From positions 186,001-250,000 of IMG/VR virus record IMGVR_UViG_3300042541_001760: a DNA stretch of 64,000 nt; one strand, written 5' to 3'. Both the position numbers and the translations under genes were made by a program. The notes below the pieces were generated by a model. It saw only the letters and a program-made list of their open reading frames with translations. It was not told the DNA's origin and made no database searches. The first letter of the stretch is position 1, and each line of letters starts with the position of its first letter. Below, one piece after another: positions 110-61,416 of this stretch.

Positions 110-117
110 TATTTATA
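110..117 (+). promoter_or_regulatory. Putative phage late promoter TATTTATA
   Basis: Motif recurs on the sense strand upstream of many structural-type genes; 14 nt before ATG 132. Confidence 0.6.
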
Positions 118-131
118 AGTAAAATATTACT

Positions 132-1175
132 ATGAATTTAGATAAAATGATTCAGAATTTTAATAATGGTGATGATGAATTCTTGTTGTTATTTGGTACT
201 AAGCATGACGAAATAATACATAGATTCTTATCACTAGTTAAACATAAGGGTAAATTAGACCAAATTTTGTGGAAAGATAATGATAATTTAGAGTATGGGG
301 TTAATAACGTACTACATTTTTTATTTAAAGAACCTGAATATAGAGAGAAGATAATTGATAACGCTATTGATTATTATAGTCGTGATGTGACTAAAGTTGG
401 TGATATAATTTATTTAAATTTTAATGATATTCGTGATTTGTCTGATTTTTTTTGTAATGAAGAATTCAGAAGAGGAGAGATGACTAGTGGTGAAATAGCG
501 AACTCCGTTTTATCTGATGATTTTTGGGAGCCTTATGATGACACGGTTAATGATTTATACGATGATGTCATTGAGGAATTGAGTCCTGAAAATCTTGATA
601 AATTAGGTAATATATTATTAAGACAAATTGGTAATACAAAAATAGAATCTGATGATGACGATTTAATATCAACTATTGCCGATGAACAAGGTCATCCCGA
701 ATATGTTATATTGGAAAAAGATGATATTACCAGAATATTAAAAGACAAATCGGCAACCAAAACGCTTTTTAGAAATGGTTATGTTGAAGGTGATTTAGAA
801 ACCGATTTGTATAATCTTCACGGAAATGCTTATAATGGTGCTTATATTAATGAGTTATATAAAATGGTTTGGAATGCTCTTGGGGACTTATTTGGAAAAG
901 GTGAATATGTTAAAGATGAAAATTCAAGAAGTAAAAACGAATATAGATTTGACATTACAGAATTATTTCCTTTAGTTATTGGTGATTTTATTGAATCTAA
1001 GATGGGTTATAGTGATAATATACAAAATTATTGGAGTTTTAATTCATTAGTAAATGAACTATTTAATTATAGTAGCAAATATGAATGTCTGAAATTAGGT
1101 AGAATACCTGATTACCCTGACCACATTGATGTTAGGAACAACTTAAACTCATCATTTGATGATTACATATACTAA
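132..1175 (+). CDS. Acidic hypothetical protein (347 aa)
   Basis: Long ORF with own putative late promoter; no recognisable family. Confidence 0.8.
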   Translation: MNLDKMIQNFNNGDDEFLLLFGTKHDEIIHRFLSLVKHKGKLDQILWKDNDNLEYGVNNVLHFLFKEPEYREKIIDNAIDYYSRDVTKVGDIIYLNFNDIRDLSDFFCNEEFRRGEMTSGEIANSVLSDDFWEPYDDTVNDLYDDVIEELSPENLDKLGNILLRQIGNTKIESDDDDLISTIADEQGHPEYVILEKDDITRILKDKSATKTLFRNGYVEGDLETDLYNLHGNAYNGAYINELYKMVWNALGDLFGKGEYVKDENSRSKNEYRFDITELFPLVIGDFIESKMGYSDNIQNYWSFNSLVNELFNYSSKYECLKLGRIPDYPDHIDVRNNLNSSFDDYIY

Positions 1176-1447
1176 GGATTAACTTTCCCGCAAATATTAA
1201 TTATTAATGACTCTTCTTCTGATGAAAGTTTATATCTATTATTAATTAAAGACATAACTTTCATATTAAAGTCCTCATCAGATTCTTTTGAAACTACATT
1301 GGATAACTTACTTGTTACGTTTGAGTTTTTTAAACACTCCATAATTACTTTATGATCCATATCATCCATTAATGATTCTAGCATTTCTCTTTTCTCTGAA
1401 CGAGTCATACCGTATAACATTTCGTCAACACTTATATCAATATCCAT
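1172..1447 (-). CDS. Hypothetical protein (91 aa)
   Basis: ORF converging on 132..1175 with 4-nt overlap. Confidence 0.7.
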   Translation of the reverse strand: MDIDISVDEMLYGMTRSEKREMLESLMDDMDHKVIMECLKNSNVTSKLSNVVSKESDEDFNMKVMSLINNRYKLSSEEESLIINICGKVNP

Positions 1448-1545
1448 ATTTTAGTTTTTAGTTAAACATATAAAATTATAGTTTTATTGTCAAATACTAT
1501 TTATCCCTAATTTTATTTTATCTATTAATTATCAAAACAATAGAT

Positions 1546-2346
1546 ATGAAATATATTAATTTAAATTCAAAAAAAGGTTTAGTAAATTTATTCGCCGATT
1601 ACATAGTTAAAGAGTTTAGTCACAATACTATGATACAAGTTTCAGATTGTGGGGCATTCTTCTTAGTCAAAGGTAAAACAGATAAAGAAGAGTATGTTGA
1701 TTTAAACGAAATAAAGAAAACATTCTTAAGTGACAATAAAAACAATTATCAATTTTTAGGTTTAGAGAATATTAATATCATTGATATTATTGAGTATGAT
1801 ACTGAAATCCTACCTAAAGATAGATGGCATTCGTTTTATCCCACTGAGAGACCTATATACACTCAATCTGTTATAGATAGACACGAAGACCTGATTAACA
1901 CAATAAACTCGTTAAATGAGGTTAATGGTAGGTCTGTTATTGAATCTGAGGAGGAGGTTATCGGTTTTGATTATTATGAATACCCATCTATGATTATAAC
2001 ATCAGAATTTCCTTATGGTTATGGTTTGGATACAGGTAGATTGGGTTACTACTATTCTGAATATATTGTCAATCATTTGTTTAACATTACCAACTCATCA
2101 AGTATTGATTTTAGATTCTCAAGTCAGGTTGATGATGATATGGAAGTTAAAATAGACATATCTTTATATGATAGTTTATTACCTAACGAATATATTAAAT
2201 CTATGGTGTTGGATGTATTTAATTTTGATGTGTCCGAACTTAAAAATGAATTACAATCTTATGACTTGTTGGATGACTTAAAGGATCCTTTTGGTAAGAA
2301 GCCTTGGTTGGTTAAGGATATGATTGGGGATATTGTTGTTATTTAA
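1546..2346 (+). CDS. Degenerate S-adenosylmethionine synthetase (MetK)-like protein lacking catalytic motifs
   Basis: Segments FFLVKGKTDKEEYVDLNEI, FPYGYG and VLDVFNFD...PFGKKPWLVKD resemble recalled MetK N-, central and C-terminal motifs; GHPDK and GGGAFSGKD absent. Confidence 0.5.
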   Translation: MKYINLNSKKGLVNLFADYIVKEFSHNTMIQVSDCGAFFLVKGKTDKEEYVDLNEIKKTFLSDNKNNYQFLGLENINIIDIIEYDTEILPKDRWHSFYPTERPIYTQSVIDRHEDLINTINSLNEVNGRSVIESEEEVIGFDYYEYPSMIITSEFPYGYGLDTGRLGYYYSEYIVNHLFNITNSSSIDFRFSSQVDDDMEVKIDISLYDSLLPNEYIKSMVLDVFNFDVSELKNELQSYDLLDDLKDPFGKKPWLVKDMIGDIVVI

Positions 2347-4565: not shown

Positions 4566-5942
4566 TTAATTTGTGTAAACTGATACTGTTATACCACCCG
4601 GTGGTATGTTTATTGTTTTATTTATTGTTGTTGATGTACAAGGTCCGTTAATGGTTAATGAAACATTATAAGTCCCTGATAATAAATATGCGTGAGTTGG
4701 ATTTTGTTGTATTGAAGTTTGACCATCACCAAAATTCCAAAAATACGTATATAAGTTATTCTGATTAACACAATTGTTAGTTATCGTAGGTGACTGAAAT
4801 GATGCGGTGGTGCAACTTATGGTTGGGTTGGGTAATATGTATTGGGGTTGGACATAAAATGACGCAAAGTTAGGTAATCCGAATCTACCTGCCCTACTCA
4901 CAAGTGGTATGGATAAGTCCGAGTAGTTACACCCGACTCCATAAACATTGGGATTATTTATAACGGATAATGATGTATTATTCCTCGCAACATAAACCTT
5001 ACCATCAGGTCCTAATTGAATTGACCCTATGAAAGCGCCTGCGTTTGATACGACTCTACGGCTAGCCTGTATCTGTGCTTGAGTTCCCGCACATAAATCC
5101 CATTGTAATAACATACCTTGGTTTGTCCCACCATATAATATTCTACCGTCAGGCGAGAATTCACATCCATAGATACCCGTCTCGTTTGATAGGGTAAATC
5201 CCCCTGATGCGAAACCTGTGGATGGGTCAAAATTATGTAACTCAATCTTATTCATTCCATAGTGACACGCCGCCAACCTTCTTCCGTTTGGTGATGCCTT
5301 TAATTGTCCATAAGCGGATTGGGGTACTCCTGATACAACAGACCCGGATATTGACCAAGTAGTAATACTAGGGACACCAACATTATCCACCAACCAAGAG
5401 GTAAATACATTTGTATTCCAATCGTGTGATAAGACCCAAACATCAACATTATTACAATGTCTGACGGCACATAACTTTTCACAGGATGGTGTTTTTAGTT
5501 GGGTATTCTTTGTTGTGACCGCACCTAACCCCACACTTAAACTCATATCAACAATTGAGTAACATATACCATTAACTCCAGCATCGTTATCCGAAGTGAA
5601 GATATAATATATGTTGGGTTGATTTGGTTTCTGAACTATGACGGCTGATTGTGTGGATGAAACATCACCGAATAAACCAGTACCATTTGTCATAACCAAA
5701 TGGTTTTTATTCCAAACGGTAATCCCGTTGGTATAGAATAATAGATTACCCAAATTATCTGATATGGTTGCCACCCCTTCAATAGTGGTTAAGGCTCCAT
5801 TGGTTAAAGCAACAGGAGACCCTGAGTTAAAGGTTATCCCCGCATTTGTCCCAAAATACCAATTAGTACTCGGACCGGGTATTTGTGAATATCCGATAAC
5901 ATAAAGTAATGAAAATAATATTATAAGTTTTAACTTTATCAT
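4566..5942 (-). CDS. Exported beta-propeller plus PKD domain protein
   Basis: Signal peptide GYS|Q; NWYFG...EGVATISD..GNLLFYTNG...NGTGL.G..SSTQSA N-terminus; PKD motif YFWNFGDG...NPTHAY..SGTYNVSLT. Confidence 0.85.
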   Translation of the reverse strand: MIKLKLIILFSLLYVIGYSQIPGPSTNWYFGTNAGITFNSGSPVALTNGALTTIEGVATISDNLGNLLFYTNGITVWNKNHLVMTNGTGLFGDVSSTQSAVIVQKPNQPNIYYIFTSDNDAGVNGICYSIVDMSLSVGLGAVTTKNTQLKTPSCEKLCAVRHCNNVDVWVLSHDWNTNVFTSWLVDNVGVPSITTWSISGSVVSGVPQSAYGQLKASPNGRRLAACHYGMNKIELHNFDPSTGFASGGFTLSNETGIYGCEFSPDGRILYGGTNQGMLLQWDLCAGTQAQIQASRRVVSNAGAFIGSIQLGPDGKVYVARNNTSLSVINNPNVYGVGCNYSDLSIPLVSRAGRFGLPNFASFYVQPQYILPNPTISCTTASFQSPTITNNCVNQNNLYTYFWNFGDGQTSIQQNPTHAYLLSGTYNVSLTINGPCTSTTINKTINIPPGGITVSVYTN

Positions 5943-6660: not shown

Positions 6661-6668
6661 TATAAATA
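6661..6668 (-). promoter_or_regulatory. Putative late promoter TATTTATA driving the 6607-to-2339 operon
   Basis: Exact motif 53 nt upstream of ATG 6607, just downstream of a terminator. Confidence 0.6.
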
Positions 6669-7065: not shown

Positions 7066-7073
7066 TATAAATA
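7066..7073 (-). promoter_or_regulatory. Putative late promoter TATTTATA
   Basis: Exact motif 4 nt upstream of ATG 7061. Confidence 0.55.
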
Positions 7074-9709: not shown

Positions 9710-9713
9710 AGTC

Positions 9714-9748
9714 AAAAAAAAAGGAGTAGAAAACTAAATCTACTCCTT
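9714..9748 (-). terminator. Terminator-like hairpin in the leader of the PcfJ-like gene
   Basis: AAGGAGTAGA/TCTACTCCTT 10-bp stem followed by a T-run on the minus strand. Confidence 0.7.
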
Positions 9749-9749
9749 A

Positions 9750-9757
9750 CAAATATA
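9750..9757 (-). promoter_or_regulatory. Bacteroidota-type -7 promoter TATATTTG (TAnnTTTG)
   Basis: Exact match in intergenic region upstream of 9709. Confidence 0.7.
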
Positions 9758-13329: not shown

Positions 13330-13337
13330 TATAAATA
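13330..13337 (-). promoter_or_regulatory. Putative late promoter TATTTATA
   Basis: Exact motif 18 nt upstream of ATG 13311. Confidence 0.6.
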
Positions 13338-14405: not shown

Positions 14406-14413
14406 CAAAGATA
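14406..14413 (-). promoter_or_regulatory. Bacteroidota-type promoter TATCTTTG
   Basis: TAnnTTTG match upstream of the small ORF and dam. Confidence 0.65.
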
Positions 14414-18017: not shown

Positions 18018-18053
18018 AGTATAAGGTTAGATTTAATAATGTGAATAAATAAA

Positions 18054-19365: not shown

Positions 19366-19373
19366 TATAAATA
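19366..19373 (-). promoter_or_regulatory. Putative late promoter TATTTATA
   Basis: Exact motif 13 nt upstream of ATG 19352. Confidence 0.6.
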
Positions 19374-23648: not shown

Positions 23649-23656
23649 TATAAATA
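23649..23656 (-). promoter_or_regulatory. Putative late promoter TATTTATA (lysis/head operon)
   Basis: Exact motif 12 nt upstream of ATG 23636. Confidence 0.6.
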
Positions 23657-23665: not shown

Positions 23666-24466
23666 TTACATATATTCAAAAAGAACCGAACTTTCATTTC
23701 GTAATTTACGAAGAGCCTTCTCTTTAATCTGTCTCACACGTTCTTTAGTAAGATTGAAGTCGTCACCGATGTCCTCCAAAGTTCTTGGTGTCCCCGTTAG
23801 ACCGAAATAATCCTCAATGATGGATCTCTCTCTTTTGTCCAAAATACCTAACACATCCATAAGTTTTTCTTTCAACTTATCTTTGGTATCAAAACCATCG
23901 TCAGGCATTACACAATTCTCATTTACGATTACATCAATAAGTGTATCTCCGTCTTCATTAATCTCGTCGTTAAGATTGACCATTGAAGGTAGTGAGGTGA
24001 ACTTATCGGACAATTGCTTGCCATTGTTCTCAACCTCTTTTTTAGCTCGTTGTAGGTCTTGTACGACATTAACAGGGAGTCGTATGGTTCTTGCGTTCTC
24101 GTTAAGAGATTGGAGAATACATTGACGAACCCACCATACCGCATATGATATAAATCGTAGGTTCTTATTCCAATCAAAATTCTCAATGGCTTTAATCAAT
24201 CCCATATTACCTTCGGCAATTAAATCGGGGAATGGTAATCCTTGATTCTGATATTGTTTTGCCACGGTAATAACAAAACGTAAATTACCTTCAACTAACT
24301 CCTGATGTATCTCATCTTTCTGTCTATCTGTTAGGTTTCCTGTGGCCATCATAGCAGCCAACTCACGTTCTCTATCAGGTGTCATAACCTTAATCTTTCT
24401 TAGATCTTTAAGATAAGATTGAATCTCGTCTTGGTTGATCGGTATTCCTGTGTTTTTCTCTCTCAT
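23666..24466 (-). CDS. rpoD: Sigma-70 family RNA polymerase sigma factor, Bacteroidota primary-sigma type (no region 1.1)
   Basis: NLRFVITVAKQY, DLIAEGNMGLIKA, FISYAVWWVRQ, TIRLP, TLEDIG...LTKERVRQIKEKALRKLR. Confidence 0.93.
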   Translation of the reverse strand: MREKNTGIPINQDEIQSYLKDLRKIKVMTPDRERELAAMMATGNLTDRQKDEIHQELVEGNLRFVITVAKQYQNQGLPFPDLIAEGNMGLIKAIENFDWNKNLRFISYAVWWVRQCILQSLNENARTIRLPVNVVQDLQRAKKEVENNGKQLSDKFTSLPSMVNLNDEINEDGDTLIDVIVNENCVMPDDGFDTKDKLKEKLMDVLGILDKRERSIIEDYFGLTGTPRTLEDIGDDFNLTKERVRQIKEKALRKLRNESSVLFEYM

Positions 24467-24470: not shown

Positions 24471-24986
24471 TTATTTTGAATATTGGTGTAAGGTTTGTTT
24501 TTCTTTTTTGGTTAATGACTCAATTCCTTTATTACTTATCTTCTCTAATATTTCATCCAAAGATAACACTTTTTCGGGAATAATGGTCTCTTGATAATCA
24601 TCGTTTGTTAAACTTAATACTTCGTTAATGGTATCATAATCTTGTTGTAACTCAGGGTTAACATTATTATAATTATCCAGAAATCCGATTCCGTCATCCT
24701 CTAAGTCAAAAAGATGTTCAAAAATTTGTGTTGGCATCTGACAAGATATCTCACCCTCGTACGGCACCAACATATATATGATACATTCGTTTGATACGAC
24801 AGAGTGGATAAATTGTTTTAATTTAAAGAAATCTTCATTGGATTTGAAGTGGAATATACTACTACTCTCACCATAACTAAATTTTACGTTTTTAGAGTCG
24901 GAGACATCGACAATTTTCTTAGCCATTCTCTCAACACCTGATTCATCGTTTTTAACTTGACCGAATATAGATAATAGATATTTCAT
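24471..24986 (-). CDS. Hypothetical protein with C-terminal DUF6576-like motif
   Basis: LDEILEKISNKGIESLTKKEKQTL terminus. Confidence 0.65.
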   Translation of the reverse strand: MKYLLSIFGQVKNDESGVERMAKKIVDVSDSKNVKFSYGESSSIFHFKSNEDFFKLKQFIHSVVSNECIIYMLVPYEGEISCQMPTQIFEHLFDLEDDGIGFLDNYNNVNPELQQDYDTINEVLSLTNDDYQETIIPEKVLSLDEILEKISNKGIESLTKKEKQTLHQYSK

Positions 24987-25003
24987 AGTTATTTATTATT
25001 TTA

Positions 25004-25011
25004 CAAATGTA
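25004..25011 (-). promoter_or_regulatory. Bacteroidota-type promoter TACATTTG (upstream of the 24986/sigma operon)
   Basis: TAnnTTTG match 17 nt upstream of ATG 24986. Confidence 0.6.
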
Positions 25012-25733: not shown

Positions 25734-25741
25734 TATATTTG
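25734..25741 (+). promoter_or_regulatory. Bacteroidota-type promoter TATATTTG
   Basis: TAnnTTTG match between the terminator and ATG 25778. Confidence 0.65.
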
Positions 25742-27854: not shown

Positions 27855-27862
27855 TATAAATA
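27855..27862 (-). promoter_or_regulatory. Putative late promoter TATTTATA
   Basis: Exact motif 14 nt upstream of MTase ATG. Confidence 0.5.
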
Positions 27863-33250: not shown

Positions 33251-33258
33251 TATTTATA
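33251..33258 (+). promoter_or_regulatory. Putative late promoter TATTTATA
   Basis: Exact motif 15 nt upstream of ATG 33274; second copy at 33267-33274. Confidence 0.6.
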
Positions 33259-34459: not shown

Positions 34460-34467
34460 CAAATATA
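34460..34467 (-). promoter_or_regulatory. Bacteroidota-type promoter TATATTTG
   Basis: TAnnTTTG match 22 nt upstream of ATG 34437. Confidence 0.65.
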
Positions 34468-35378: not shown

Positions 35379-35386
35379 CAAAGATA
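35379..35386 (-). promoter_or_regulatory. Bacteroidota-type promoter TATCTTTG
   Basis: 5 nt upstream of primase ATG 35373. Confidence 0.6.
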
Positions 35387-35461
35387 AACAAAATTTATAA
35401 ATCAATCAATATTCACAAGTTTTCTAATAACACTATATTTATTGACATAGAACACAATTAG

Positions 35462-40115: not shown

Positions 40116-40123
40116 TATAAATA
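40116..40123 (-). promoter_or_regulatory. Putative late promoter TATTTATA
   Basis: Exact motif 4 nt upstream of ATG 40111. Confidence 0.6.
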
Positions 40124-41799: not shown

Positions 41800-41807
41800 T
41801 ATAAATA
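41800..41807 (-). promoter_or_regulatory. Putative late promoter TATTTATA
   Basis: Exact motif upstream of ATG 41753. Confidence 0.55.
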
Positions 41808-41845: not shown

Positions 41846-41853
41846 TATTTATA
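41846..41853 (+). promoter_or_regulatory. Putative late promoter TATTTATA
   Basis: Exact motif 4 nt upstream of ATG 41858. Confidence 0.55.
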
Positions 41854-48952: not shown

Positions 48953-48988
48953 CTTTTTTAATTAAATTATTATTTTTTTAACCATATT

Positions 48989-48996
48989 TATAAATA
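48989..48996 (-). promoter_or_regulatory. Putative late promoter TATTTATA
   Basis: Within palindrome TATTTATAAATA upstream of ATG 48952. Confidence 0.55.
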
Positions 48997-52789: not shown

Positions 52790-55700
52790 TAGTCAGCAAA
52801 TGCGTCTGTGTCAATCCATTTAGCGGTAAATCTATCGAAAGCCGATGCCCCTTTAGCTAATCCAAAATAAAAATAGAATGGAGCGCCTAAGTTGTATTTA
52901 CCGGATATCCCAGGTTCCGGTTTATAATCACTTTCACCTGTTGCTGGATTAATGACTAAAGGCCCATCAACATTATAAATCCAACCTTTATTGTATTTTA
53001 TTTCAGTTACGCTAGGACTTGGTTGGAATGTTCTCGATCCATTTACACCTCCGTACAGTCTATCTATTTTTTGATATCCGTATTTGAATGCGTTAGCACC
53101 CGCACCACCAAAAACCCAGTCATTTGTTTGTTTTCCGAAAATATTATCATTACCACTATTATTAAAAATTTGCCATAAATAAAATGGGACTGTTTGTGTT
53201 GTAACCGGGATATAAGTAAAATTACAATCATTATTTATTCCAATAAGACCATCTGGATTATATAAAGTTCTATTTGGTGATATATAATCTCTAAGTTGAC
53301 TATCGCCAGTATAAAAAATACCAAAAGTAATATCCTTATAACTACCAACCCCACCCGGAAAATATAAAGGTGAGTTAAATCCTGAATTAATAGCTGGCTC
53401 AGGATAATTTGCAGGTTCAAAAGCGGAGATACCTAATTGTGAATTGGTTGCAATCATTTGAGAAAAATCCGCATCAACGAATCTTTTAGGACGTGAAAAA
53501 TAATTCATAATACTAGCACCCGCAGGTGTCCCAAATAACGCTCCAAAACTTGTACTAGCAAATCTTGACAATATGAATATATTCAATATTTCTGAAGTAT
53601 CTCCGAATGTTGTACTATTTAACTTATTCATAATATACCCATCCCAATTTCCGCTTTGAGATAAAAATTTTTGTAGTTCGTCTCTTGGACCTAAGTCCAT
53701 CATCGTCGTTGGGAACATTAAATTTCTACTATTTCCTAAAAGATTTGATCCGTCATAAAACCCTTTTTTACCTACGAAATCATCTGTAGCTTCATCATAT
53801 GGTGAACTCCTATAATAAAAATTAGAAGTGTCAGGGTCTAAGTATATTGTATCTTTACAATATTTATTATATGGTATATTTGGTGGATTTCCATTTGGTC
53901 CGGTAAAATATCTTGTTGTTTTAAATGGGAACATATACAATGACCCATTAACCCAATTATTAAAAAACGTATGTGAAAATACTTCCCTACAAGCTCCAAA
54001 ATTAATATTCATTCGTGATAACCACTCAGTAACTAATTGTAAGTCTTTAGTTAAATGTGCCCCTAAATAATTTGCATGTACTAAATTATAACAAGACCCA
54101 CCAATAAAAAATTGGGCATATCCTCCTGATGTATAAAATTGACAAGATGCTGCCGGTAAAATATCTAGTGTATCATTAACATTTTGATAACAACCTATTG
54201 GGACTAAATGTTCACAAGCAAAAGAATCTAATACTTTATCAACCGATCCAAAACTTTCTGGTTCAGTTGATCCGGTAATTCTAATATCAGGGTCATCACC
54301 GGGAAACGCTTGAGTCCCTGACGCTGGGTTTACACCGGCAACAACACCTTCATCAGATAGTTGATATACGGTAAATTGCCCGTTAGCCATCATATTCATA
54401 CCTTGCGGTATAATCGTATTAACTGTATTAAAAGATTGAAATAGGTCGGATGTCGGCATTCTGTCAGTCCTCATTACAATTCTATTACTATCTGACATTA
54501 TAGTATTAACAGTAGGGAGGTATTTTGGAGAAAAGTATACTGACCCTAACGCCGTTCTAGTTCCATTATTTAAAGTATTTATTTCAGATCTCATACCAAC
54601 CATAGATCCACCTTCAACACTCTCCCCAATAGCATATCTTTTACCCACAAATTGCATAATTTCAACATTAGCGGGAGGTGCAGGAGGTACGGTAGGTGCA
54701 ACATAATTTACAGGAAATCCGCAGTAACCACTATCTGATGGACCATCAATCTGAGAACCTGGTAGTCTAGCATACATATTCTTACCACCAACTCTTAACC
54801 CCCCTCCTGTTGTTCCATTAGTTCCACCAATAAAAGTATATTCCGCTATTGATGAATACATTGCGGGTGGTGTTCCCCCTGGTGCGTAACCAACTACATT
54901 ACTATTTTCATCCAATGATGAGTAATTAGAGCTTCGATATGTTGGGAATGGTGTCCATTGATCCGGTTGGAAGTGATAAGAAGGGAAGAATAGTCTACCA
55001 TTAGAATATCCGGTATCTACCGAGGTATTATTAATAATATTTGTATGATTTACGCATCTATGAGCATTATTATAGGCAATTACATCGGATCCAATTTGAA
55101 GCGATTGACCAAAATCTAAACCATCATTAGGTTGTAATGGGATGTTCATTTTGAAATCACCAATAACCGAAACATCAAAATGGGTAGTTCTACCAAATAA
55201 ACGACCTAAACCATATTTTATGGGTATCCTACTTGAATGGGGGTCAACACCTCTAACCATTATAGTTATTAGGGCATTTGGTTTATCTGAATATAATGAC
55301 CAAAGGTTAATCCAAGACCAAAGTCCAGGACTGTTGGTATTTGCTCTTATATCGGGTCCGTTAGTCCCAATAGATTGATTAATTGGCGTCCAATTATTAA
55401 ATATCCTCGCGAAGAAACTTTCTTGTTCTCTTTTATCTTGAAGCCATCCCGACGAGACAAGTATATTACTGTATTCATCAAATGTCATTGCGGTAATAAC
55501 TTGAAAGTATTCAATACCTGTTGGGTATTTTAGATATCTATCCGTATCTGAATTAGTTTGAGTTATATTGTAATTAGTAACCTTTCTACCTCCCGTAATG
55601 GGGTCTGTGTAACTAACAGTTGTTGTACCACTAACGTTTATAGGATTACCCGTTACTGAATATGTACCATACGCATTTGCTTGAGTTGTGGCGCTCATAT

Positions 55701-58700
55701 TAACATCAACGCCGTCATAAGGATTATTAAATGTTAAAATAGTACCAGATTCAATTTTTTCCTCCAACATTAACATCATTATATTATCGTAATGAGTTCC
55801 ACCATTGAATCCCTCATTAAATCTGACTCTTATTTGATTTGTACCTCCACCTAAACAATAATCACTACCATTAACGGTATCTATAACTCTAACACTATTA
55901 TTAGAATTTCCAACATATAAATAATCATTAGTCGTATTATACACCGCAAAACTAGGGGTTGATCCAACGGATATCGTATTAATCACAGAATTAATTGAGG
56001 TATCAATAACACTAACTGTATTGGATAAGGTATTTCCAACATATAAACGATTTTCCCCTGAAACATACGTACCAAAGGAAGGATTTGTTCCTGGTCCTAT
56101 GGATATTATTGTTATCAACGAATTATTATTTATGGTATCAAAAACACTAACATCACCGGAACCACTATTTCCAACATATAGATAACCATTATCAGGATTA
56201 TATGTCCCAAAAGTAGGGTTTGTCCCTGGACCTATAGTTATTAAGTCAATTACCGTAACACCAGATATTACACTAATAGTACCATCCCCTCTATTTCCAA
56301 CATATAAACAATTATTATTGGGGGTATATGTTCCGAAAGAAGGATTATTACCAACTGATATTGTTGGTATTGTACTAGACGTACCTGATATTACACTAAC
56401 AGTACCATCTCCTTTATTTCCAACATAAACGCAATTATTACTAGGGTTGTATGTTCCGAAAATAGGTTGGTCTCCAACATTTTTAATTCCAGCAATTCCA
56501 TTATTTACGGTATTTATAATAGTAACAGTATCACTCGCATTATTTCCAACATATAGATATTGATTAACAGGATTATATGTTCCGAAAGAAGGATTATTAC
56601 CAAAAAGAATTATCGAACCACTCGCAACATTGTTTGTGGTATTTATTGGTTTAACTTGACCATTAGCACCACCAAATCCAACATATAAAGTATTATTGAC
56701 ATACGTTCCAAAAGTAGGATTTGAACCGACTGATATCGTACTAACCCCCCCATTATTCGCGGTATCAATAGCACTAACATTACTAGATCCATTATTTCCA
56801 ACATATAAACGACCATTTGGCGCATATGTTCCAAAGATAGGATTTGTTCCAACGGTGATTGATCTTGTATCCGTTCTCTTATTTAAATCACCTGTAGTAT
56901 TAATCTCAGCATTACCTTCACCAAAAAACTTACCCTTAAAGTTCATCATATTAACGCTTTCCGGTATAGTTAATCCTTGAACCCAAATAAAACGACCATC
57001 ACTAAAATTATCTCTTTGTGGTGTTCTAAAAGCGGCTGAATATTGTAAATTATTAGATATCCAACCCGCAGCAAATCTTTGTATTGGCCCAATAACCTCA
57101 TCATAATCAGTATTAACGTCATAAGATCCTGGATCAATTATATTTGCCAATATACTACTATTAGTAAATAGTGGTGGTCTATATGTGGATCCTGGATTAT
57201 TAAACCCTTCGTTTGTTGGAGTACATGAACAGAGTTGGCATTCGGGAAAAACAAATAACGGGATTGCTAATTGACTAAATCTATTTTCTATGTCAATTAA
57301 AACCTGCCAATTTTCAAAGGGTCGTAAAGTAAACGATAAAAGGCTACCACTATATCCGATTCCGAAGTTCCTTATTTTTGAAACTAGAAAGCATATAACG
57401 TGAAATATTGTTACTACCAATTTTAATATGATAGAAATAAAGGACGATACAATTACAAATAGTAAAAACAATAAATCAAATCTATATTGAGCATCATTGG
57501 TTGGAAATTTATTACTTGTACTTTCACAAGTTTCATCGGTAATGTTTTTAATTCCTAAGTATTGTCTTTGTCTATTACCTTTCGTGAATCTTGTTACAAG
57601 TTGAGATATCGTATAAACTTTATTATATGACATCTCGTAGAATTTATCTTCACAATTTATAGCCTCCTGTATAATATCATCACCAAATGATGACCCTGAA
57701 TACCCATAATCATCCCAATCTAAACTAAATGCATATGATTTCTTAGCCGCAATATATCCACCTGAAGTGGATGCGAAATTTATCAGAGGATCATCATCGG
57801 GATTATTTGAATCCCACCCATTTTCTTTTACGTTTGGTATTAAGAAGTTTGCTCGTTTAATTGGTTCACCCAAACTTGGTGACTGATTCCATTTTACTTT
57901 AAATCTATATTTAGATTTGGTTGGTATTCCTTTTCTCTCATCATTTGAGAATATTTGCTCACCAAATTCATTTGTTATTATAAAATCCAAATTCATTGGT
58001 ACATCTAATAGCCAAGCACCATCAGAATCGATAACTTTACCGTTGTTTTCAAACTCGTACTCCTCTAAAATAGGTCTACCGTTTATATCTTGTTTAATCG
58101 TTTGTCTAATCGCCAATATCTGACCCGGTCCTGAAATTAAATTACATTGGTATCCAGATTTTTTAATTGGTTTACAATTTTTTCTTAACGCCGATTCATC
58201 AGTATCGGATATGATTGAACCCATAAAAATCGCGGTAGGTTTAATGGTGATACTAGCCTCGGCAGTTAAATCAAAATCGGTTCTTGTAATTGATGGTTGA
58301 CAAATTTCAGGTTCACCCCACAATGGTAAAACCTCAACTGTCTTATTTAAGAAGATAATCTGTGGTAATGTTGTTAAATTCTCTGATGTTTGGAATTTAG
58401 TTCCGTTAACTTGACTCTCGGTGGCTACACCTATTCTTATTAAATCCTGTGGTGATTGTGAAAACGGACCCATATCTGATAAATCCAAATTCATTAAGAT
58501 TGTGTAACTACCAACAGGAACTCCAAATATCATAAAGTCACCACTGTCATTGGTTGTTACAGTAAATTTATAATACTTGTCATATAACTCAATTGCGGTA
58601 GGATTTGTTAATACATCTTCTAAGTCAGGAAATGACCCTGTGGCTGCGTGTCCAGGAAATGATGGTTTGTAAGGTAATAAATTATATTTATAACCATCCT

Positions 58701-58992
58701 CATTAATATCACTTATTGTTTTATAAGGATATATTTCACTGATGGTTGGATTTAACTCGTCATCGGCGGTTATTGGTATGAATAACGATAATTTAGCGTT
58801 AGGTACACCATATCCATCATTGACGGAAACCCTACCAGCAATAACACCATAATCGGAACATTGTCTTACATATATCTCGCTTTGTGATAATTTTAAGGAT
58901 AATATTTCCAAAAAATCAAAATCTTGATCTAAATTTACGGTTACTGATTTATCAACGCCAACCTGCGTTCTTACCCTATATGACTTCGACAT
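52789..58992 (-). CDS. Very large (2067 aa) tail/baseplate protein with an inserted YVTN-type beta-propeller
   Basis: Baseplate operon position; eight tandem ~42-aa repeats (I.VG.NP.FGTY....LYVGN....VSVID). Confidence 0.75.
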   Translation of the reverse strand: MSKSYRVRTQVGVDKSVTVNLDQDFDFLEILSLKLSQSEIYVRQCSDYGVIAGRVSVNDGYGVPNAKLSLFIPITADDELNPTISEIYPYKTISDINEDGYKYNLLPYKPSFPGHAATGSFPDLEDVLTNPTAIELYDKYYKFTVTTNDSGDFMIFGVPVGSYTILMNLDLSDMGPFSQSPQDLIRIGVATESQVNGTKFQTSENLTTLPQIIFLNKTVEVLPLWGEPEICQPSITRTDFDLTAEASITIKPTAIFMGSIISDTDESALRKNCKPIKKSGYQCNLISGPGQILAIRQTIKQDINGRPILEEYEFENNGKVIDSDGAWLLDVPMNLDFIITNEFGEQIFSNDERKGIPTKSKYRFKVKWNQSPSLGEPIKRANFLIPNVKENGWDSNNPDDDPLINFASTSGGYIAAKKSYAFSLDWDDYGYSGSSFGDDIIQEAINCEDKFYEMSYNKVYTISQLVTRFTKGNRQRQYLGIKNITDETCESTSNKFPTNDAQYRFDLLFLLFVIVSSFISIILKLVVTIFHVICFLVSKIRNFGIGYSGSLLSFTLRPFENWQVLIDIENRFSQLAIPLFVFPECQLCSCTPTNEGFNNPGSTYRPPLFTNSSILANIIDPGSYDVNTDYDEVIGPIQRFAAGWISNNLQYSAAFRTPQRDNFSDGRFIWVQGLTIPESVNMMNFKGKFFGEGNAEINTTGDLNKRTDTRSITVGTNPIFGTYAPNGRLYVGNNGSSNVSAIDTANNGGVSTISVGSNPTFGTYVNNTLYVGFGGANGQVKPINTTNNVASGSIILFGNNPSFGTYNPVNQYLYVGNNASDTVTIINTVNNGIAGIKNVGDQPIFGTYNPSNNCVYVGNKGDGTVSVISGTSSTIPTISVGNNPSFGTYTPNNNCLYVGNRGDGTISVISGVTVIDLITIGPGTNPTFGTYNPDNGYLYVGNSGSGDVSVFDTINNNSLITIISIGPGTNPSFGTYVSGENRLYVGNTLSNTVSVIDTSINSVINTISVGSTPSFAVYNTTNDYLYVGNSNNSVRVIDTVNGSDYCLGGGTNQIRVRFNEGFNGGTHYDNIMMLMLEEKIESGTILTFNNPYDGVDVNMSATTQANAYGTYSVTGNPINVSGTTTVSYTDPITGGRKVTNYNITQTNSDTDRYLKYPTGIEYFQVITAMTFDEYSNILVSSGWLQDKREQESFFARIFNNWTPINQSIGTNGPDIRANTNSPGLWSWINLWSLYSDKPNALITIMVRGVDPHSSRIPIKYGLGRLFGRTTHFDVSVIGDFKMNIPLQPNDGLDFGQSLQIGSDVIAYNNAHRCVNHTNIINNTSVDTGYSNGRLFFPSYHFQPDQWTPFPTYRSSNYSSLDENSNVVGYAPGGTPPAMYSSIAEYTFIGGTNGTTGGGLRVGGKNMYARLPGSQIDGPSDSGYCGFPVNYVAPTVPPAPPANVEIMQFVGKRYAIGESVEGGSMVGMRSEINTLNNGTRTALGSVYFSPKYLPTVNTIMSDSNRIVMRTDRMPTSDLFQSFNTVNTIIPQGMNMMANGQFTVYQLSDEGVVAGVNPASGTQAFPGDDPDIRITGSTEPESFGSVDKVLDSFACEHLVPIGCYQNVNDTLDILPAASCQFYTSGGYAQFFIGGSCYNLVHANYLGAHLTKDLQLVTEWLSRMNINFGACREVFSHTFFNNWVNGSLYMFPFKTTRYFTGPNGNPPNIPYNKYCKDTIYLDPDTSNFYYRSSPYDEATDDFVGKKGFYDGSNLLGNSRNLMFPTTMMDLGPRDELQKFLSQSGNWDGYIMNKLNSTTFGDTSEILNIFILSRFASTSFGALFGTPAGASIMNYFSRPKRFVDADFSQMIATNSQLGISAFEPANYPEPAINSGFNSPLYFPGGVGSYKDITFGIFYTGDSQLRDYISPNRTLYNPDGLIGINNDCNFTYIPVTTQTVPFYLWQIFNNSGNDNIFGKQTNDWVFGGAGANAFKYGYQKIDRLYGGVNGSRTFQPSPSVTEIKYNKGWIYNVDGPLVINPATGESDYKPEPGISGKYNLGAPFYFYFGLAKGASAFDRFTAKWIDTDAFAD
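55868..56870 (-). repeat. Eight YVTN/YncE-like beta-propeller blade repeats
   Basis: Visible at protein and DNA level (recurrent ttccaacata on the plus strand). Confidence 0.85.
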
Positions 58993-59063
58993 TTAATACT
59001 TTTTGAATAAATAGTTTATATTCTACTTTCAAAAAATAATTGATTTAATAAAAAAATAAATTA

Positions 59064-60902
59064 TCAACTGAAATTAACCGTTTTTAGGTTTTTAACCCTA
59101 ACTCTAATATCTCTGCCGGGATATCTAACTTGATATATCTGTGTCGGTTCAGCAAATATCGTATCATCAATAAGTTCTATTTGTCTTGTTGTTGAATCCA
59201 AATATCTTTGTGAGGTTTGTGATGATGAGTATTGACCCCCAACTTCATTTATAACATCTATTGCCGCCACACTAATAACACCGTTTAAAGTTTGTACTTG
59301 TCTTCTTATTTCAGATATATAGACATTCTCACCCATCTCTCTAACTGATGGTGAGAAGTATTTAGTTACAATATCAACCATTTGTGAAATAACCACACCT
59401 TGGTTTTGACTTGAATCCAATACAACCGATATGTCCATACTAAGGTCAACAACTTGAGCACTTTCTACGGATATATAGTCATTAATCATTCGGTAGTTTG
59501 AAAGGTAGTTAGCAATGTTTGTTTTAAGTGTGTTTGAAATAACATTACTTAATCCTCCACTTGAATCGTATGATAATATCTGAATTTTAATTTTATTCTC
59601 TTGTTCGGTTACCGCTACTTTGGCGGGTGCTCCGAATTGTGAAGGCATTTTTCTAATTAAAGATTCGTAGTCATTAATTGTTACCGCTCTGTTTTGTGCC
59701 GCAAAATTGTATGTTACATAGTTTCTTACTTCCTCAATAGTTGGTACATTTGCCCCACCTATTGCGGCGGTTGTATTATTACATGTTAATGTATTAACTA
59801 CCGTTGTATTTTGTGTTTGTGATGGACCGTTAACGAAGAATGAGACCGTACCTAATTGATTAAGGACATTGACACCTAAATTGGTTGATATACCACCACC
59901 AACTCTGTATTGGATGAATAATGTGGTGTTAGCCTTCAATGTACTACCCAAAGCAAAGTTGTTTGAGTATTTTTGTAGATTCATGGGGTTACCATTGGCG
60001 GCAAAATCTCTTAATTGTTCGTCCGCCGATTGACTACCCCCACCGAATATCATTTTAAAGAAACTCTCAGGAGTAAATTCTGTTATAAATCTTGTAGGCG
60101 CCGGAACATATTTACCCACCTTTACACCAGGTTGGTCTGATACTTTAGTTGGATCCTCAACAAAAACTTTGTCCTGTATTAAAGCATCAACTTCGTACCA
60201 TCTATTATCTAATCCCAAGAATTCATTATCTGTTGGTATATTCGCATATTGTGTTCCGTCTTTTAATAATACACTTGTTACACCTAAAACATTTTTTTCA
60301 GGTAAGAATAACTCAAAAAATGGTCTTACATCGTTTGATGATATAACTCTTTTGAACACTTTAGTAATACCGTTAACTACGGTTTCTCTTTTTGTAATCG
60401 TATAATTAATAATCTTATTATTGGCATCAAAGTTTGGAACTTTGGTTCTGTTTGGAAACCCTTCGTTATTATATGGTGATGAAAAATCTATGTCATATAC
60501 GGTCTCAAATGTTTGACCCGCACCATTTATCTGTGACCCCCTTCTTAGGATACCACAATACCTAATATCCTCTTTATCTCCGAAAGCCGGAACAGTTATT
60601 GAGAAATCAACTAACGCAACTGATGGTCTTTGTCCGGGTATTTTAAGTCCATAAGTTCTGGCAATGTTGTATATTGATGACCTCTGTTGAGCGTATTGTA
60701 ATACCGTTTCTTGAATACTTCTATCAATATTAAATTGTAGGTTGTCTGATACCGCAGCATTTAAATCAAGTAACACCGAGAATGTTGAAGCGTCATTTAC
60801 GTTAGATAACAAATCAGGATAGTATGTTTTAACAAAATTAATTAATTCCGTTCTTATCCCCTGAAAATCTCTCGTAGTATAGGATATTTTTTTATTTGCC
60901 AT
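59064..60902 (-). CDS. Baseplate wedge protein (T4 gp6 / baseplate J-like)
   Basis: ISYTTRDF.GIR.ELI, ARTYG.K..G.RPS, QNRAVTINDY, MPSQFG.PAKV; adjacent to gp25. Confidence 0.85.
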   Translation of the reverse strand: MANKKISYTTRDFQGIRTELINFVKTYYPDLLSNVNDASTFSVLLDLNAAVSDNLQFNIDRSIQETVLQYAQQRSSIYNIARTYGLKIPGQRPSVALVDFSITVPAFGDKEDIRYCGILRRGSQINGAGQTFETVYDIDFSSPYNNEGFPNRTKVPNFDANNKIINYTITKRETVVNGITKVFKRVISSNDVRPFFELFLPEKNVLGVTSVLLKDGTQYANIPTDNEFLGLDNRWYEVDALIQDKVFVEDPTKVSDQPGVKVGKYVPAPTRFITEFTPESFFKMIFGGGSQSADEQLRDFAANGNPMNLQKYSNNFALGSTLKANTTLFIQYRVGGGISTNLGVNVLNQLGTVSFFVNGPSQTQNTTVVNTLTCNNTTAAIGGANVPTIEEVRNYVTYNFAAQNRAVTINDYESLIRKMPSQFGAPAKVAVTEQENKIKIQILSYDSSGGLSNVISNTLKTNIANYLSNYRMINDYISVESAQVVDLSMDISVVLDSSQNQGVVISQMVDIVTKYFSPSVREMGENVYISEIRRQVQTLNGVISVAAIDVINEVGGQYSSSQTSQRYLDSTTRQIELIDDTIFAEPTQIYQVRYPGRDIRVRVKNLKTVNFS

Positions 60903-60908
60903 AATCTA

Positions 60909-61367
60909 TTAAATATTAATTATTATAAAATCACTTGACTCAAATACATTAGATGTGATTTTATAATCTATTCTAACTTTAGCGGTATGTTCTTTTGTTC
61001 CGATACCGGGAACTCTAAAAACCCTCTCATCACCACTTATTACGGTAACATTTGGGTCGTCTTCTTCTGTTGATGCGTCATAAACGGCGATTTTCGTTAT
61101 TACCAAATTAGGTACGTATTTTGAAACTGAATCTCTTATTTCTGATTCTATCTCGGAGAATGTTGGTCCGTCTAATGGTTCAAATATATATTCAAGTAGT
61201 CTAGTTCCGAAGTCAGGTAAAAAATATCTTGTCCCCTTTCTCGTTAATAACAGATGTATAAGGTCAGTTCTAATCTCCTCCTCAATGGTTGATGATAAAT
61301 CTAAAAATCTACCATCAAATGAATCCCTGAATGGGAAATTTATTCCATATGTAACGCCGTTTGCCAT
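60909..61367 (-). CDS. Baseplate wedge protein gp25-like (GPW/gp25 family)
   Basis: LI.LLLTRKGTR.F.PDFGTRL..YIFEP...I..EI..SV.KY.P. Confidence 0.9.
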   Translation of the reverse strand: MANGVTYGINFPFRDSFDGRFLDLSSTIEEEIRTDLIHLLLTRKGTRYFLPDFGTRLLEYIFEPLDGPTFSEIESEIRDSVSKYVPNLVITKIAVYDASTEEDDPNVTVISGDERVFRVPGIGTKEHTAKVRIDYKITSNVFESSDFIIINI

Positions 61368-61370
61368 ACA

Positions 61371-61378
61371 TATAAATA
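61371..61378 (-). promoter_or_regulatory. Putative late promoter TATTTATA
   Basis: Exact motif 3 nt upstream of ATG 61367; second copy at 61407-61414. Confidence 0.6.
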
Positions 61379-61416
61379 TAGTGCCTCTAATTTTTCTTTA
61401 AATAGGTATAAAATAA

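What the first reader, a model, noticed from the sequence alone, without database searches (positions are those of the whole stretch)
110..61414. Two promoter classes plus a phage-encoded Bacteroidota-type primary sigma factor
Seen: TAnnTTTG sites (9750, 14406, 25004, 25734, 34460, 35379) precede mainly replication, regulatory and other non-structural genes. Exact sense-strand TATTTATA (110, 6661, 7066, 13330, 19366, 23649, 27855, 33251, 40116, 41800, 41846, 48989, 61371, 61407) precedes mostly structural, lysis and accessory operons on both strands. Variants occur at 1498, 18044, 25016, 35436 and 59006. Established: TAnnTTTG is the Bacteroidota housekeeping -7 element. Inference: TATTTATA is the late promoter, possibly read by the sigma at 23666..24466, which itself lies behind a host-type promoter. 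Caveat: AT-rich 8-mers also occur by chance.
Basis: partly seen in the sequence, partly recalled or inferred. Interest (0 to 1): 0.6.

Follow-up and report, generated by a model that had tools for sequence, protein, structure and literature searches.

The report
Two promoter classes, two phage sigmas

Summary
TATTTATA is the most over-represented, strand-specific upstream 8-mer of this phage. Genome-wide, 58 of 107 copies lie in the 7.4% intergenic DNA, and co-directional gaps hold 33 sense against 2 antisense copies. TTTG-N19-21-TAnnTTTG, the Bacteroidota housekeeping layout, is a second real class. The gene at 23666..24466 is an RpoD-family sigma with the short Bacteroidota-like architecture, and it lies behind a host-type promoter in all 32 related loci.

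The link between TATTTATA and that sigma is not supported. The genome holds a second sigma outside the window (G000 40578-41321, 247 aa). Its family hits Sigma70_r2 and the T4 late-sigma PHROG, and its best structural match is T4 gp55. TATTTATA matches the T4 late promoter TATAAATA at 6 of 8 positions and has no -33 element. Two cultured phages, Flavobacterium phage immuto and Microcystis phage Mel-JY01, carry this second sigma but no RpoD-like sigma, and TATTTATA is again a leading sense-upstream motif in both (top 8-mer in immuto, second in Mel-JY01).

Many sites sit 3-4 nt before the ATG, which implies leaderless mRNAs. No RNA data exist, so timing and start sites remain inferred. I rate this a new variant of a known kind.

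The parts
110..117 (+). Late-type site TATTTATA, 14 nt before the ATG of gene 132-1175
6661..6668 (-). Late-type site TATTTATA, 53 nt before gene 5939-6607, the head of a minus-strand operon running down to 2339
7066..7073 (-). Late-type site TATTTATA, 4 nt before the ATG of 6750-7061 (leaderless geometry)
13330..13337 (-). Late-type site, 18 nt before the LRR protein gene 11497-13311
19366..19373 (-). Late-type site, 13 nt before gene 18054-19352
23649..23656 (-). Late-type site directly after the RpoD-like sigma gene, 12 nt before 23361-23636. It heads the operon running down to 19377 and is conserved in the closest relatives.
27855..27862 (-). Late-type site, 14 nt before gene 26392-27840
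33251..33258 (+). Late-type site, 15 nt before gene 33274-33954
40116..40123 (-). Late-type site, 4 nt before the ATG of the 758-aa gene 37835-40111 (leaderless geometry)
41800..41807 (-). Late-type site, 46 nt before the SprB-repeat protein gene 40140-41753
41846..41853 (+). Late-type site, 4 nt before the ATG of the small ORF 41858-42040, divergent from the site at 41800
48989..48996 (-). Late-type site, 36 nt before 48044-48952. It heads the operon with the 993-aa and 764-aa (SprB repeat) proteins. It overlaps a plus-strand copy at 48985, together forming a palindrome.
61371..61378 (-). Late-type site, 3 nt before the ATG of 60909-61367. It heads the operon with the baseplate wedge gene 59064-60902.
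59006..59013 (-). Variant TATTTATT, 13 nt before the 2067-aa gene 52789-58992. Further one-mismatch variants lie at 1498-1505 (+), 18044-18051 (-), 24990-24997 (+), 35436-35443 (+) and 61397-61404 (-).
   Evidence: TATTTAT[AT] counts 51 sense against 7 antisense in co-directional gaps
9750..9757 (-). Host-type -7 element TATATTTG with TTTG about 21 nt upstream, 34 nt before gene 8015-9715
14406..14413 (-). Host-type -7 element TATCTTTG with TTTG 19 nt upstream, on the strand of the DNA methyltransferase gene 13357-14202
25004..25011 (-). Host-type -7 element TACATTTG with TTTG 20 nt upstream, 17 nt before 24471-24986. This is the promoter of the two-gene operon that ends with the RpoD-like sigma.
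25734..25741 (+). Host-type -7 element TATATTTG, 36 nt before gene 25778-26395
34460..34467 (-). Host-type -7 element TATATTTG, 22 nt before gene 34000-34437
35379..35386 (-). Host-type -7 element TATCTTTG, 5 nt before an in-frame ATG at 35373 of the DnaG-type primase gene. The primase therefore probably starts there, not at the TTG at 35391.
23666..24466 (-). RpoD-family sigma factor, 266 aa, with regions 1.2, 2, 3 and 4 and no region 1.1
24471..24986 (-). 171-aa acidic protein with a DUF6576 C-terminal motif, co-transcribed upstream of the sigma gene in all related loci

Best explanation
The window comes from a roughly 261-kb lake-water jumbo phage whose host is a member of the Bacteroidota. 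It has no detectable RNA polymerase of its own, so it must use the host core enzyme.

Class 1 promoters (TTTG, 19-21 nt, TAnnTTTG) have the host housekeeping layout. They drive early or middle genes, including the operon that ends with the RpoD-like sigma at 23666..24466. They are read by host sigma-A and probably also by that phage sigma, because its recognition helices match those of Bacteroidota sigma-A.

Class 2 (a purine followed by TATTTATA, with no -33 element) is the late-type promoter. It is most likely read by a second phage sigma: a 247-aa two-domain protein whose N-terminal domain is related to T4 gp55. That gene lies outside the window at G000 40578-41321.

If the TA of either motif sits at -12/-11, transcription would start 11 nt after the A. 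For the many sites that lie 4 nt before the ATG, that nucleotide is the A of the start codon, which would give leaderless mRNAs.

Shown: the motifs, their strand and position bias, their conservation, both sigma genes, and the co-occurrence of TATTTATA with the second sigma. Inferred: timing, transcription start sites, and which sigma binds which motif.
For: Conservation: TATTTATA is the top sense-upstream 8-mer in G002, a relative whose RpoD-like sigma is only 49% identical (42 sense, 9 antisense, 64 in the genome).

Second sigma:
- Orthologues in G001 and G002 give weak Sigma70_r2 hits.
- The own-genome copy is 70% identical to the G001 one.
- It hits phrog_234, 'late sigma transcription factor', at E about 1e-3.
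- The family comprises 1538 clusters.
- Of 50 diverse members, 19 hit Sigma70_r2 (best 5e-7) and 8 hit phrog_234 (best 1.8e-5).
- hhalign against T4 gp55 gives 52.6% probability, E = 1.4e-4, over 103 columns.
- The best structural match of 48,161 chains is T4 gp55 in 7d7d_F (Z 10.2, rmsd 2.6 A, 96 residues).

Motif form: TATTTATA equals the T4 late box TATAAATA at 6 of 8 positions in the same orientation. It lacks the G peak of a -33 TTTG that the TAnnTTTG class shows.

Co-occurrence without the RpoD-like sigma:
- Flavobacterium phage immuto has a family member at E = 3.6e-38 and no RpoD-like sigma by Pfam, profile or tblastn. TATTTATA counts 23 sense and 8 antisense, with 45 in the genome.
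- Microcystis phage Mel-JY01 has a family member at E = 7e-31 and no Sigma70_r2 hit. TATTTATA counts 15 sense and 1 antisense.

Only two strand-biased upstream motif classes were found for three candidate sigmas.

The RpoD-like sigma shares FISYAVWW..QSILQ and LT(K/R)ERVRQIKEKA with Bacteroidota sigma-A.

No T7-type or beta-prime-type RNA polymerase was found.

Leaderless geometry: 15 sites at 3-4 nt against 3.6 expected.

Gene content matches the classes.
Against: - There are no RNA data. Only lake-water DNA runs hold this sequence, so no start site or timing has been measured.
- The own copy of the second sigma is below threshold on its own for Pfam and PHROGs, and its link to gp55 is remote.
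- The T4 co-factors gp33 and the gp45 clamp were not found.
- The C-terminal domain matches sigma region 4 only weakly (Z about 5-6).
- The RpoD-like sigma does carry clade-specific changes in regions 1.2 and 2.3, which line the -7 and discriminator pockets. An altered specificity therefore cannot be excluded.
- No AT-rich phage that lacks the second sigma was examined as a negative control. The only control was 80 cellular Bacteroidota loci at 44% GC (1 sense, 4 antisense).
Confidence: 0.68

Rival explanations
1. The RpoD-like sigma at 23666..24466 is made early from a host-type promoter and then redirects host core polymerase to TATTTATA late promoters.
For: The sigma gene lies behind a conserved host-type promoter. 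TATTTATA shares the TA and two T positions with TAnnTTTG and the same spacing to start codons. The phage sigma clade has invariant substitutions in region 1.2 and in region 2.3 (FDW.KN.RF against FDETRGFKF), where -7 and discriminator bases are read.
Against: TATTTATA is equally dominant in immuto and Mel-JY01, which have no RpoD-like sigma. Helices 2.4 and 4.2 are host-like, yet the sites have no -33 element. The model would leave the conserved gp55-related sigma with no visible promoter class.
Confidence: 0.14
2. TATTTATA is read by host sigma-A itself, alone or with a phage activator, as a degenerate -7 element. No phage sigma is involved.
For: The register relative to start codons is the same as for TAnnTTTG. 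Both begin with TA.
Against: The same motif is conserved in phages of Bacteroidota and of a cyanobacterium, whose housekeeping promoters differ. It is not enriched upstream of genes in 80 cellular Bacteroidota loci (1 sense, 4 antisense). It lacks the -33 element.
Confidence: 0.08
3. TATTTATA is not a promoter. It is an RNA-level or other signal, such as a processing site, a translation enhancer or a recombination hotspot between gene cassettes.
For: It often fills very short gaps between co-directional genes and sits very close to start codons. No transcript data exist.
Against: Its distance to the ATG varies from 3 to 53 nt, with peaks at 3-4 and 13-14, which does not suit a ribosome signal. 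It resembles the T4 late box. It also heads divergent gene pairs, one copy per strand (12 plus and 11 minus in divergent gaps).
Confidence: 0.06

Closest known systems
Phage T4 late transcription (gp55 sigma, TATAAATA box at -10, no -35)
   Same: Both use a single 8-bp A/T box with no -35 element, placed close to many late genes. Six of the 8 bases are identical in the same orientation. The sigma gene lies in a block free of the late motif.
   Different: The two central bases are TT, not AA. The sigma has about 100 extra C-terminal residues that fold as a separate helical domain. No gp33 or gp45-type clamp was found. Many sites abut the ATG, which suggests leaderless mRNAs.
Bacteroidota housekeeping promoter (-33 TTTG / -7 TAnnTTTG) and its short primary sigma lacking region 1.1
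   Same: Class 1 sites have both elements at 19-21 nt spacing. The phage sigma is short, starts at region 1.2, shares the 2.3-2.4 and 4.2 helices, and scores best against Bacteroidota/FCB sigma-A (177-193 bits against 169 for the best solved sigma).
   Different: Identity is only 40-43%. The protein is below every NCBIfam RpoD cut-off. It forms its own long branch rather than nesting in Bacteroidota. Regions 1.2 and 2.3 are changed.
Group 2 (T4-like) jumbo phages as described by Iyer et al. 2021 (PMC7824862)
   Same: That paper reports that these phages lack their own RNA polymerase and carry two kinds of sigma, a minimal one and one close to cellular RpoD. Bacteroidetes phages are among them.
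   Different: The paper also reports a gp33 orthologue in the group, which was not found here. It names no promoter motifs. The second sigma here is not minimal; it has two domains.
Bacillus phage SPO1 sigma cascade (gp28, then gp33/gp34)
   Same: Host sigma reads the early genes, which include genes for phage sigmas that then take over the host core enzyme.
   Different: The sigmas and the promoter sequences are unrelated. This comparison rests on my own knowledge and was not tested here.

Membership tests
Bacteroidota -33/-7 housekeeping promoter | -7 element TAnnTTTG on the sense strand upstream of genes | tested here: met
   37 sense against 10 antisense in co-directional gaps. 54 intergenic copies against 29.2 in shuffles.
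Bacteroidota -33/-7 housekeeping promoter | -33 element TTTG about 19-21 nt upstream of the -7 element | tested here: met
   The composite pattern occurs 8 times against 0.8 expected, with 12 sense and 1 antisense. There is a G peak at -21/-20 in G000 and G002.
Bacteroidota -33/-7 housekeeping promoter | Transcripts start a few nt downstream and depend on sigma-A | not testable with these tools
   No RNA runs hold this sequence.
Bacteroidota-type primary sigma (short, no region 1.1) | About 280-290 aa, starting at region 1.2, with regions 2 and 4 | tested here: met
   The phage sigma is 266 aa with Pfam r1_2, r2 and r4 hits. Cellular relatives are 284-295 aa.
Bacteroidota-type primary sigma (short, no region 1.1) | Recognition helices 2.4 and 4.2 as in Bacteroidota sigma-A | tested here: met
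   QSILQ is identical. LTKERVRQIKEKA differs from LTRERVRQIKEKA by one conservative change.
Bacteroidota-type primary sigma (short, no region 1.1) | Branches within Bacteroidota sigma-A | tested here: not met
   The phage clade sits on its own long stem (1.87), separate from the FCB and outgroup clusters.
Bacteroidota-type primary sigma (short, no region 1.1) | Passes curated RpoD family thresholds | tested here: not met
   The best NCBIfam hits are RpoD and RpoS at 180-190 bits, against cut-offs of 354-572.
T4-type late transcription | gp55-family sigma (region-2-like domain) | tested here: inconclusive
   Top structural hit is gp55 at Z 10.2. hhalign gives 52.6% probability. 8 of 50 family members hit phrog_234. 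The own protein alone reaches only E about 1e-3.
T4-type late transcription | Promoter TATAAATA at -10 without a -35 element | tested here: not met
   The box is TATTTATA (6 of 8 identical). Sense TATAAATA is rare: 2 of 35 in co-directional gaps. The absence of a -35/-33 element is met.
T4-type late transcription | Co-activator gp33 and sliding clamp gp45 | tested here: not met
   phrog_254, phrog_223, PF09116 and PF02916 give no match in G000, G001 or G002. The records are 88-93% complete and divergent homologues could be missed.
Sigma-70 family (for the 247-aa protein) | Region 2 fold and sequence | tested here: met
   19 of 50 family members hit PF04542. The top 30 structural matches are almost all sigma domain 2.
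Sigma-70 family (for the 247-aa protein) | Region 4 helix-turn-helix | tested here: inconclusive
   A model of the domain alone has pLDDT 82. Sigma-E, sigma-H, sigma-28 and SigA region 4 are among the top hits but only at Z 4.9-5.6, which is within noise.

The most novel reading that the evidence does not exclude
A very large, unnamed family of phage sigma factors directs late transcription from a conserved TATTTATA box in phages of at least two host phyla, Bacteroidota and Cyanobacteria. The family combines a gp55-like region 2 with its own C-terminal domain and spans about 1500 clusters at 50% identity. It would act without a gp33/clamp system and would often produce leaderless mRNAs. In the jumbo members, a separate phage-owned RpoD-like sigma would replace host sigma-A at host-type promoters.
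Probability: 0.5. Interest if true: 0.65.

Novelty: new variant of a known kind. Interest (0 to 1): 0.55.

Why it matters
Almost nothing is known about how phages of Bacteroidota time their gene expression. This analysis gives a concrete, testable scheme: one conserved 8-bp box, a candidate sigma for it, and two cultured phage-host pairs in which the scheme can be tested (immuto with Flavobacterium sp. LMO8, and Mel-JY01 with Microcystis). The box could serve as an annotation mark for late operons in thousands of lake and marine phage contigs. It could also serve as a compact, orthogonal sigma-promoter pair for Bacteroidota genetics. The analysis also corrects a natural mis-assignment, since the conspicuous RpoD-like sigma is probably not the late factor.

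Tried and rejected
- **Nearest relatives.** Megablast of 20 kb of the window against cultured phages found nothing. An early idea that this was a crAss-like phage, prompted by the 2067-aa protein, was dropped: that protein has no PHROG hit and only beta-propeller traces.
- **Cellular relatives of the sigma.** A single-sequence scan of bacterial genomes found nothing because the peptide patterns were clade-specific. The alignment-based scan worked, but its patterns favour proteins with the FISYAVW signature.
- **Relatives of a virus record.** 'Relatives' cannot be drawn for a virus record.
- **Second sigma against cultured phages and solved structures.** tblastn of the own protein gave only one weak hit. 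A sequence search against solved structures gave none. Foldseek gave only weak sigma matches because the two domains are oriented differently.
- **Third promoter class.** TTGACA-type sigma-70 boxes are not enriched or strand-biased (9 sense, 12 antisense). No other strand-biased motif appeared.
- **Transcript evidence.** All 24 runs that hold the sequence are lake-water DNA runs kept as contigs. Read laying was therefore not used, because contigs cannot show RNA starts.
- **Distant members of the second sigma family in IMG/VR.** One query found no relatives. One alignment was too diverse to search with. The top 80 loci for alignment A2 were all close relatives.
- **T4 as a method control.** The two fetched T4 pieces are early regions and hold almost no late boxes.
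- **Other.** One call failed on a wrong handle type. No other genetic code was needed.
Full report
**What the window is.** The window is bases 186001-250000 of a single 261,052-bp IMG/VR virus record, 89% complete by CheckV, with 32% GC. It has no close cultured relative. Most of its proteins have no PHROG or Pfam family. The recognisable ones are a baseplate wedge protein, the ribonucleotide reductase large subunit, an SbcC-like nuclease, DNA methyltransferases and a DnaG-type primase. Two large proteins carry SprB repeats, a Bacteroidota adhesin repeat. The DNA occurs in lake-water metagenomes from 23 studies. A Bacteroidota host is inferred from the SprB repeats, the promoter type and the sigma relatives described below.

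**The TATTTATA observation.** The site given as 61407 is a one-mismatch variant, TATTTAAA at 61397-61404. I laid out the whole genome and made a simple ORF map of 367 genes with 7.4% intergenic DNA.
- TATTTATA occurs 107 times, 58 of them intergenic. That is about 15 times the coding density, where similar A/T 8-mers show 2-6 times.
- It is the commonest 8-mer in sense-oriented upstream regions, present in 50 of 224.
- Intergenic DNA holds 54 copies against 13.3 +/- 3.5 in dinucleotide shuffles of that DNA.
- Gaps between co-directional genes hold 33 sense and 2 antisense copies (p = 4e-8).
- In divergent gaps there are 12 on one strand and 11 on the other, one for each gene.
- Within the window, 15 of 29 copies lie in the 3.8% intergenic DNA.
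- The base before the motif is a purine in 47 of 52 sites. TATTTATT is the main variant.

**The TAnnTTTG observation.** All six listed sites exist. The bare pattern is common in coding DNA, but it is enriched and strand-biased in gaps: 54 copies against 29.2 +/- 5.2, with 37 sense and 10 antisense. With TTTG 18-22 nt upstream it occurs 8 times against 0.8 expected. Position counts show a G peak at -21/-20 upstream of the motif in this genome and in the relative G002. G002 has a dense array of such promoters. This is the Bacteroidota -33/-7 layout, which I take from established knowledge.

**Gene content behind each class.**
- TATTTATA heads the baseplate operon, the operons with the SprB-repeat proteins and the 758-aa and 2067-aa proteins. 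Elsewhere in the genome it heads three endolysin-domain proteins and a weak head-protease match.
- TAnnTTTG heads the primase, a methyltransferase, the sigma operon, an HNH endonuclease, a peptidase and a phosphoesterase.
Most proteins are unannotated, however, and no expression data exist.

**Position relative to start codons.** The distance from the end of TATTTATA to the ATG peaks at 3-4 nt (15 sites against 3.6 expected) and at 13-14 nt (11 against 2.5). TAnnTTTG also has a group at 4-5 nt. If the TA of either motif is at -12/-11, as in sigma-70-type -10 elements, transcription would start 11 nt after the A. For a 4-nt spacing that nucleotide is the A of the ATG. I therefore infer frequent leaderless mRNAs. 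This is an inference, not a measurement.

**The sigma in the window.**
- The protein from 23666..24466 has Pfam regions 1.2, 2 and 4. It matches RpoD and RpoS models best but falls below all curated cut-offs.
- Thousands of near relatives (74-97% identity) occur on metagenome contigs of up to about 330 kb, so this is a large phage clade.
- The closest cellular proteins are sigma-A of Bacteroidota and other FCB-group bacteria. They are 40-43% identical over nearly the full length and are themselves only 284-295 aa.
- phmmer scores are 177-193 bits against these, 169 bits for the best solved sigma (a Firmicutes SigA) and 140 bits for E. coli RpoD.
- Regions 2.3-2.4 (FISYAVWW..QSILQ) and 4.2 (LTKERVRQIKEKA, against LTRERVRQIKEKA) are shared with Bacteroidota sigma-A. 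Region 1.2 and part of region 2.3 differ in a clade-invariant way.
- In a maximum-likelihood tree the phage sigmas form their own long branch and are not nested in Bacteroidota.
- The gene follows a 171-aa gene with a DUF6576 motif. In all 32 related loci a composite host-type promoter lies in front of that pair, and no TATTTAT[AT] lies nearby, with one exception.

**A second sigma outside the window.** A Sigma70_r2 scan of relatives gave a second weak hit in G001 and G002.
- The orthologue in this genome lies at G000 40578-41321 and is 247 aa.
- It hits the PHROG 'late sigma transcription factor', the T4 gp55 family, at E about 1e-3.
- A profile search of 1.84 billion representatives found 1538 clusters, mostly 230-270 aa and covering both halves of the protein.
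- Of 50 diverse members, 19 hit Sigma70_r2 (best 5e-7) and 8 hit the gp55 PHROG (best 1.8e-5). No other family was hit by more than one member.
- hhalign of that alignment against T4 gp55 gives 52.6% probability, E = 1.4e-4, over 103 columns.
- An AlphaFold model (pLDDT 72) has two helical domains.
- In a search of 48,161 chains, the best match of the N-terminal domain is gp55 in the T4 gp45-dependent activation complex (7d7d_F: Z 10.2, rmsd 2.6 A, 96 residues). Many sigma domain-2 structures follow.
- The C-terminal domain modelled alone (pLDDT 82) matches several sigma region-4 structures, but only at Z 4.9-5.6, so this is inconclusive.
- gp33 and gp45-type clamp profiles find nothing in three genomes of the clade.
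- No T7-type or beta-prime-type RNA polymerase was found.
- Iyer et al. 2021 (PMC7824862) already noted that T4-like 'group 2' jumbo phages carry both a minimal sigma and an RpoD-like sigma.

**Which sigma reads TATTTATA.** Several lines point to the second sigma.
1. The box equals the T4 late box TATAAATA at 6 of 8 positions in the same orientation. Like the T4 box, it has no -35/-33 partner.
2. The RpoD-like sigma keeps host-like 2.4 and 4.2 helices. That fits the TTTG/TAnnTTTG class better.
3. Only two strand-biased upstream motif classes are visible in G000 and G002. If the RpoD-like sigma read TATTTATA, the conserved second sigma would have no targets.
4. The box is conserved. In G002 (310 kb, RpoD-like sigma 49% identical) it is again the top sense-upstream 8-mer, with 42 sense, 9 antisense and 64 in the genome.
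5. Most tellingly, two cultured phages carry the second sigma family but no RpoD-like sigma.
   - Flavobacterium phage vB_FspM_immuto_2-6A (160,410 bp): profile E = 3.6e-38 for the family member. There is no Sigma70_r2 hit at E <= 1, no hit to an RpoD profile, and a best tblastn E of 0.085.
   - Microcystis phage Mel-JY01 (190,001 bp): profile E = 7e-31 for the family member and no Sigma70_r2 hit.
   - In immuto, TATTTATA is the top sense-upstream 8-mer (23 sense, 8 antisense, 45 in the genome). It precedes the large genes at 90-155 kb and the gene right after the sigma gene.
   - In Mel-JY01 it counts 15 sense and 1 antisense.
6. In 31 of 52 loci of the present clade a TATTTATA also sits directly after the second sigma gene. 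In 49 of 52 there is none within 4.5 kb upstream.
7. In 80 cellular Bacteroidota loci TATTTATA shows no upstream bias (1 sense, 4 antisense), while TAnnTTTG does (30 against 18).

**What remains open.** There is no transcript evidence at all. The gp55 relationship is remote, and the own protein alone is sub-threshold. No AT-rich phage that lacks the second sigma was tested as a negative control. The RpoD-like sigma has changes in regions 1.2 and 2.3 that could alter reading of the downstream half of the -10-like element. The role I give the RpoD-like sigma, reading host-type promoters in place of or beside host sigma-A, is inferred only from its conserved recognition helices.

**Verdict.** There are two promoter classes and an RpoD-like, Bacteroidota-like phage sigma behind a host-type promoter. 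The late-type box, however, most likely belongs to a different, gp55-related sigma encoded outside the window. A literature search found no paper that reports TATTTATA as a phage promoter. This is a new variant of the T4-type early/late scheme, and cultured systems are available to test it.

Noticed in passing
G000:C1:40578-41321 (+), outside the window; locus L117:1477-2220: A 247-aa divergent sigma related to T4 gp55. Its family has about 1500 clusters at 50% identity, and public sources call its members 'hypothetical protein'. A 120-aa acidic protein follows it, behind a TATTTATA box.
   Followed up: yes
window 24471-24986 (-): A 171-aa acidic protein with a DUF6576 C-terminal motif always sits directly upstream of the RpoD-like sigma, in the same operon, in all 32 related loci. 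It could be a partner or regulator of that sigma.
   Followed up: partly
window 7066, 40116, 41846, 61371; genome-wide list: Fifteen TATTTATA boxes end 3-4 nt before an ATG. Several TAnnTTTG boxes end 4-5 nt before one, including the primase gene at 35379. This suggests widespread leaderless mRNAs in this phage.
   Followed up: partly
window 6750-7061 (-) and G000 156415-156732, 156751-157059, 176930-177271: A family of small paralogous genes (about 100 aa, starting ATGGAC) shares nearly the same junction: stop codon, GG, TATTTATA, four bases, ATG.
   Followed up: no
window 34474-35391 (-): The longest ORF of the DnaG-type primase starts at a TTG at 35391, but the host-type box at 35379-35386 lies inside it. 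The real start is probably the ATG at 35373.
   Followed up: partly
window 10096-11466 and 11497-13311 (-): Two adjacent proteins have leucine-rich-repeat matches at their C-terminal ends. This is unusual for a phage. One of them lies behind a TATTTATA box.
   Followed up: no
window 52789-58992 (-): A 2067-aa protein in the baseplate/fibre block has only weak beta-propeller matches and no PHROG family.
   Followed up: no
window 40140-41753 and 42767-45061 (-): SprB repeats, known from Bacteroidota gliding-motility adhesins, occur in two large late proteins that are likely fibres. This hints at the host phylum.
   Followed up: no
window 48985-48996: Two overlapping TATTTATA copies on opposite strands form the palindrome TATTTATAAATA. 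Only the minus-strand copy faces a gene.
   Followed up: no
G000:C1 about 54573-54640 (-), upstream of gene 54120-54572: A perfect E. coli-type TTGACA, 17 nt, TATAAT promoter sequence sits in a gap. TTGACA as such is not enriched or strand-biased in this genome.
   Followed up: partly
G000:C1:1-4600: The left end of the record has GT-rich short repeats (GGTGT/TTGGTG units) and ORF-free gaps of 400-1400 bp, unlike the rest of the genome.
   Followed up: no
G002 (loci L121-L123), about 41-98 kb: Many host-type promoters in this relative carry a palindrome, GGAATATTC(C/G), between the -33 TTTGG and the -7 box. It looks like an operator for a repressor.
   Followed up: no
Flavobacterium phage immuto, NC_055915.1 60-76 kb (loci L235-L236): Sixteen near-identical early-type promoters have the form AGTTGC, 19 nt, TATATTTAG, then GTATCAATAATTAAAAC. 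They lie 21-30 nt before small genes, just upstream of the sigma gene. The -7 element differs from TAnnTTTG by one extra A.
   Followed up: partly
related loci L006-L014 and L033, just after the RpoD-like sigma gene: In these relatives the TATTTATT after the sigma gene lies in the loop of a terminator-like hairpin (CCTTC...GAAGG followed by a T run). In L017 and L024-L028 a host-type promoter takes that place. Promoters turn over between close relatives.
   Followed up: no
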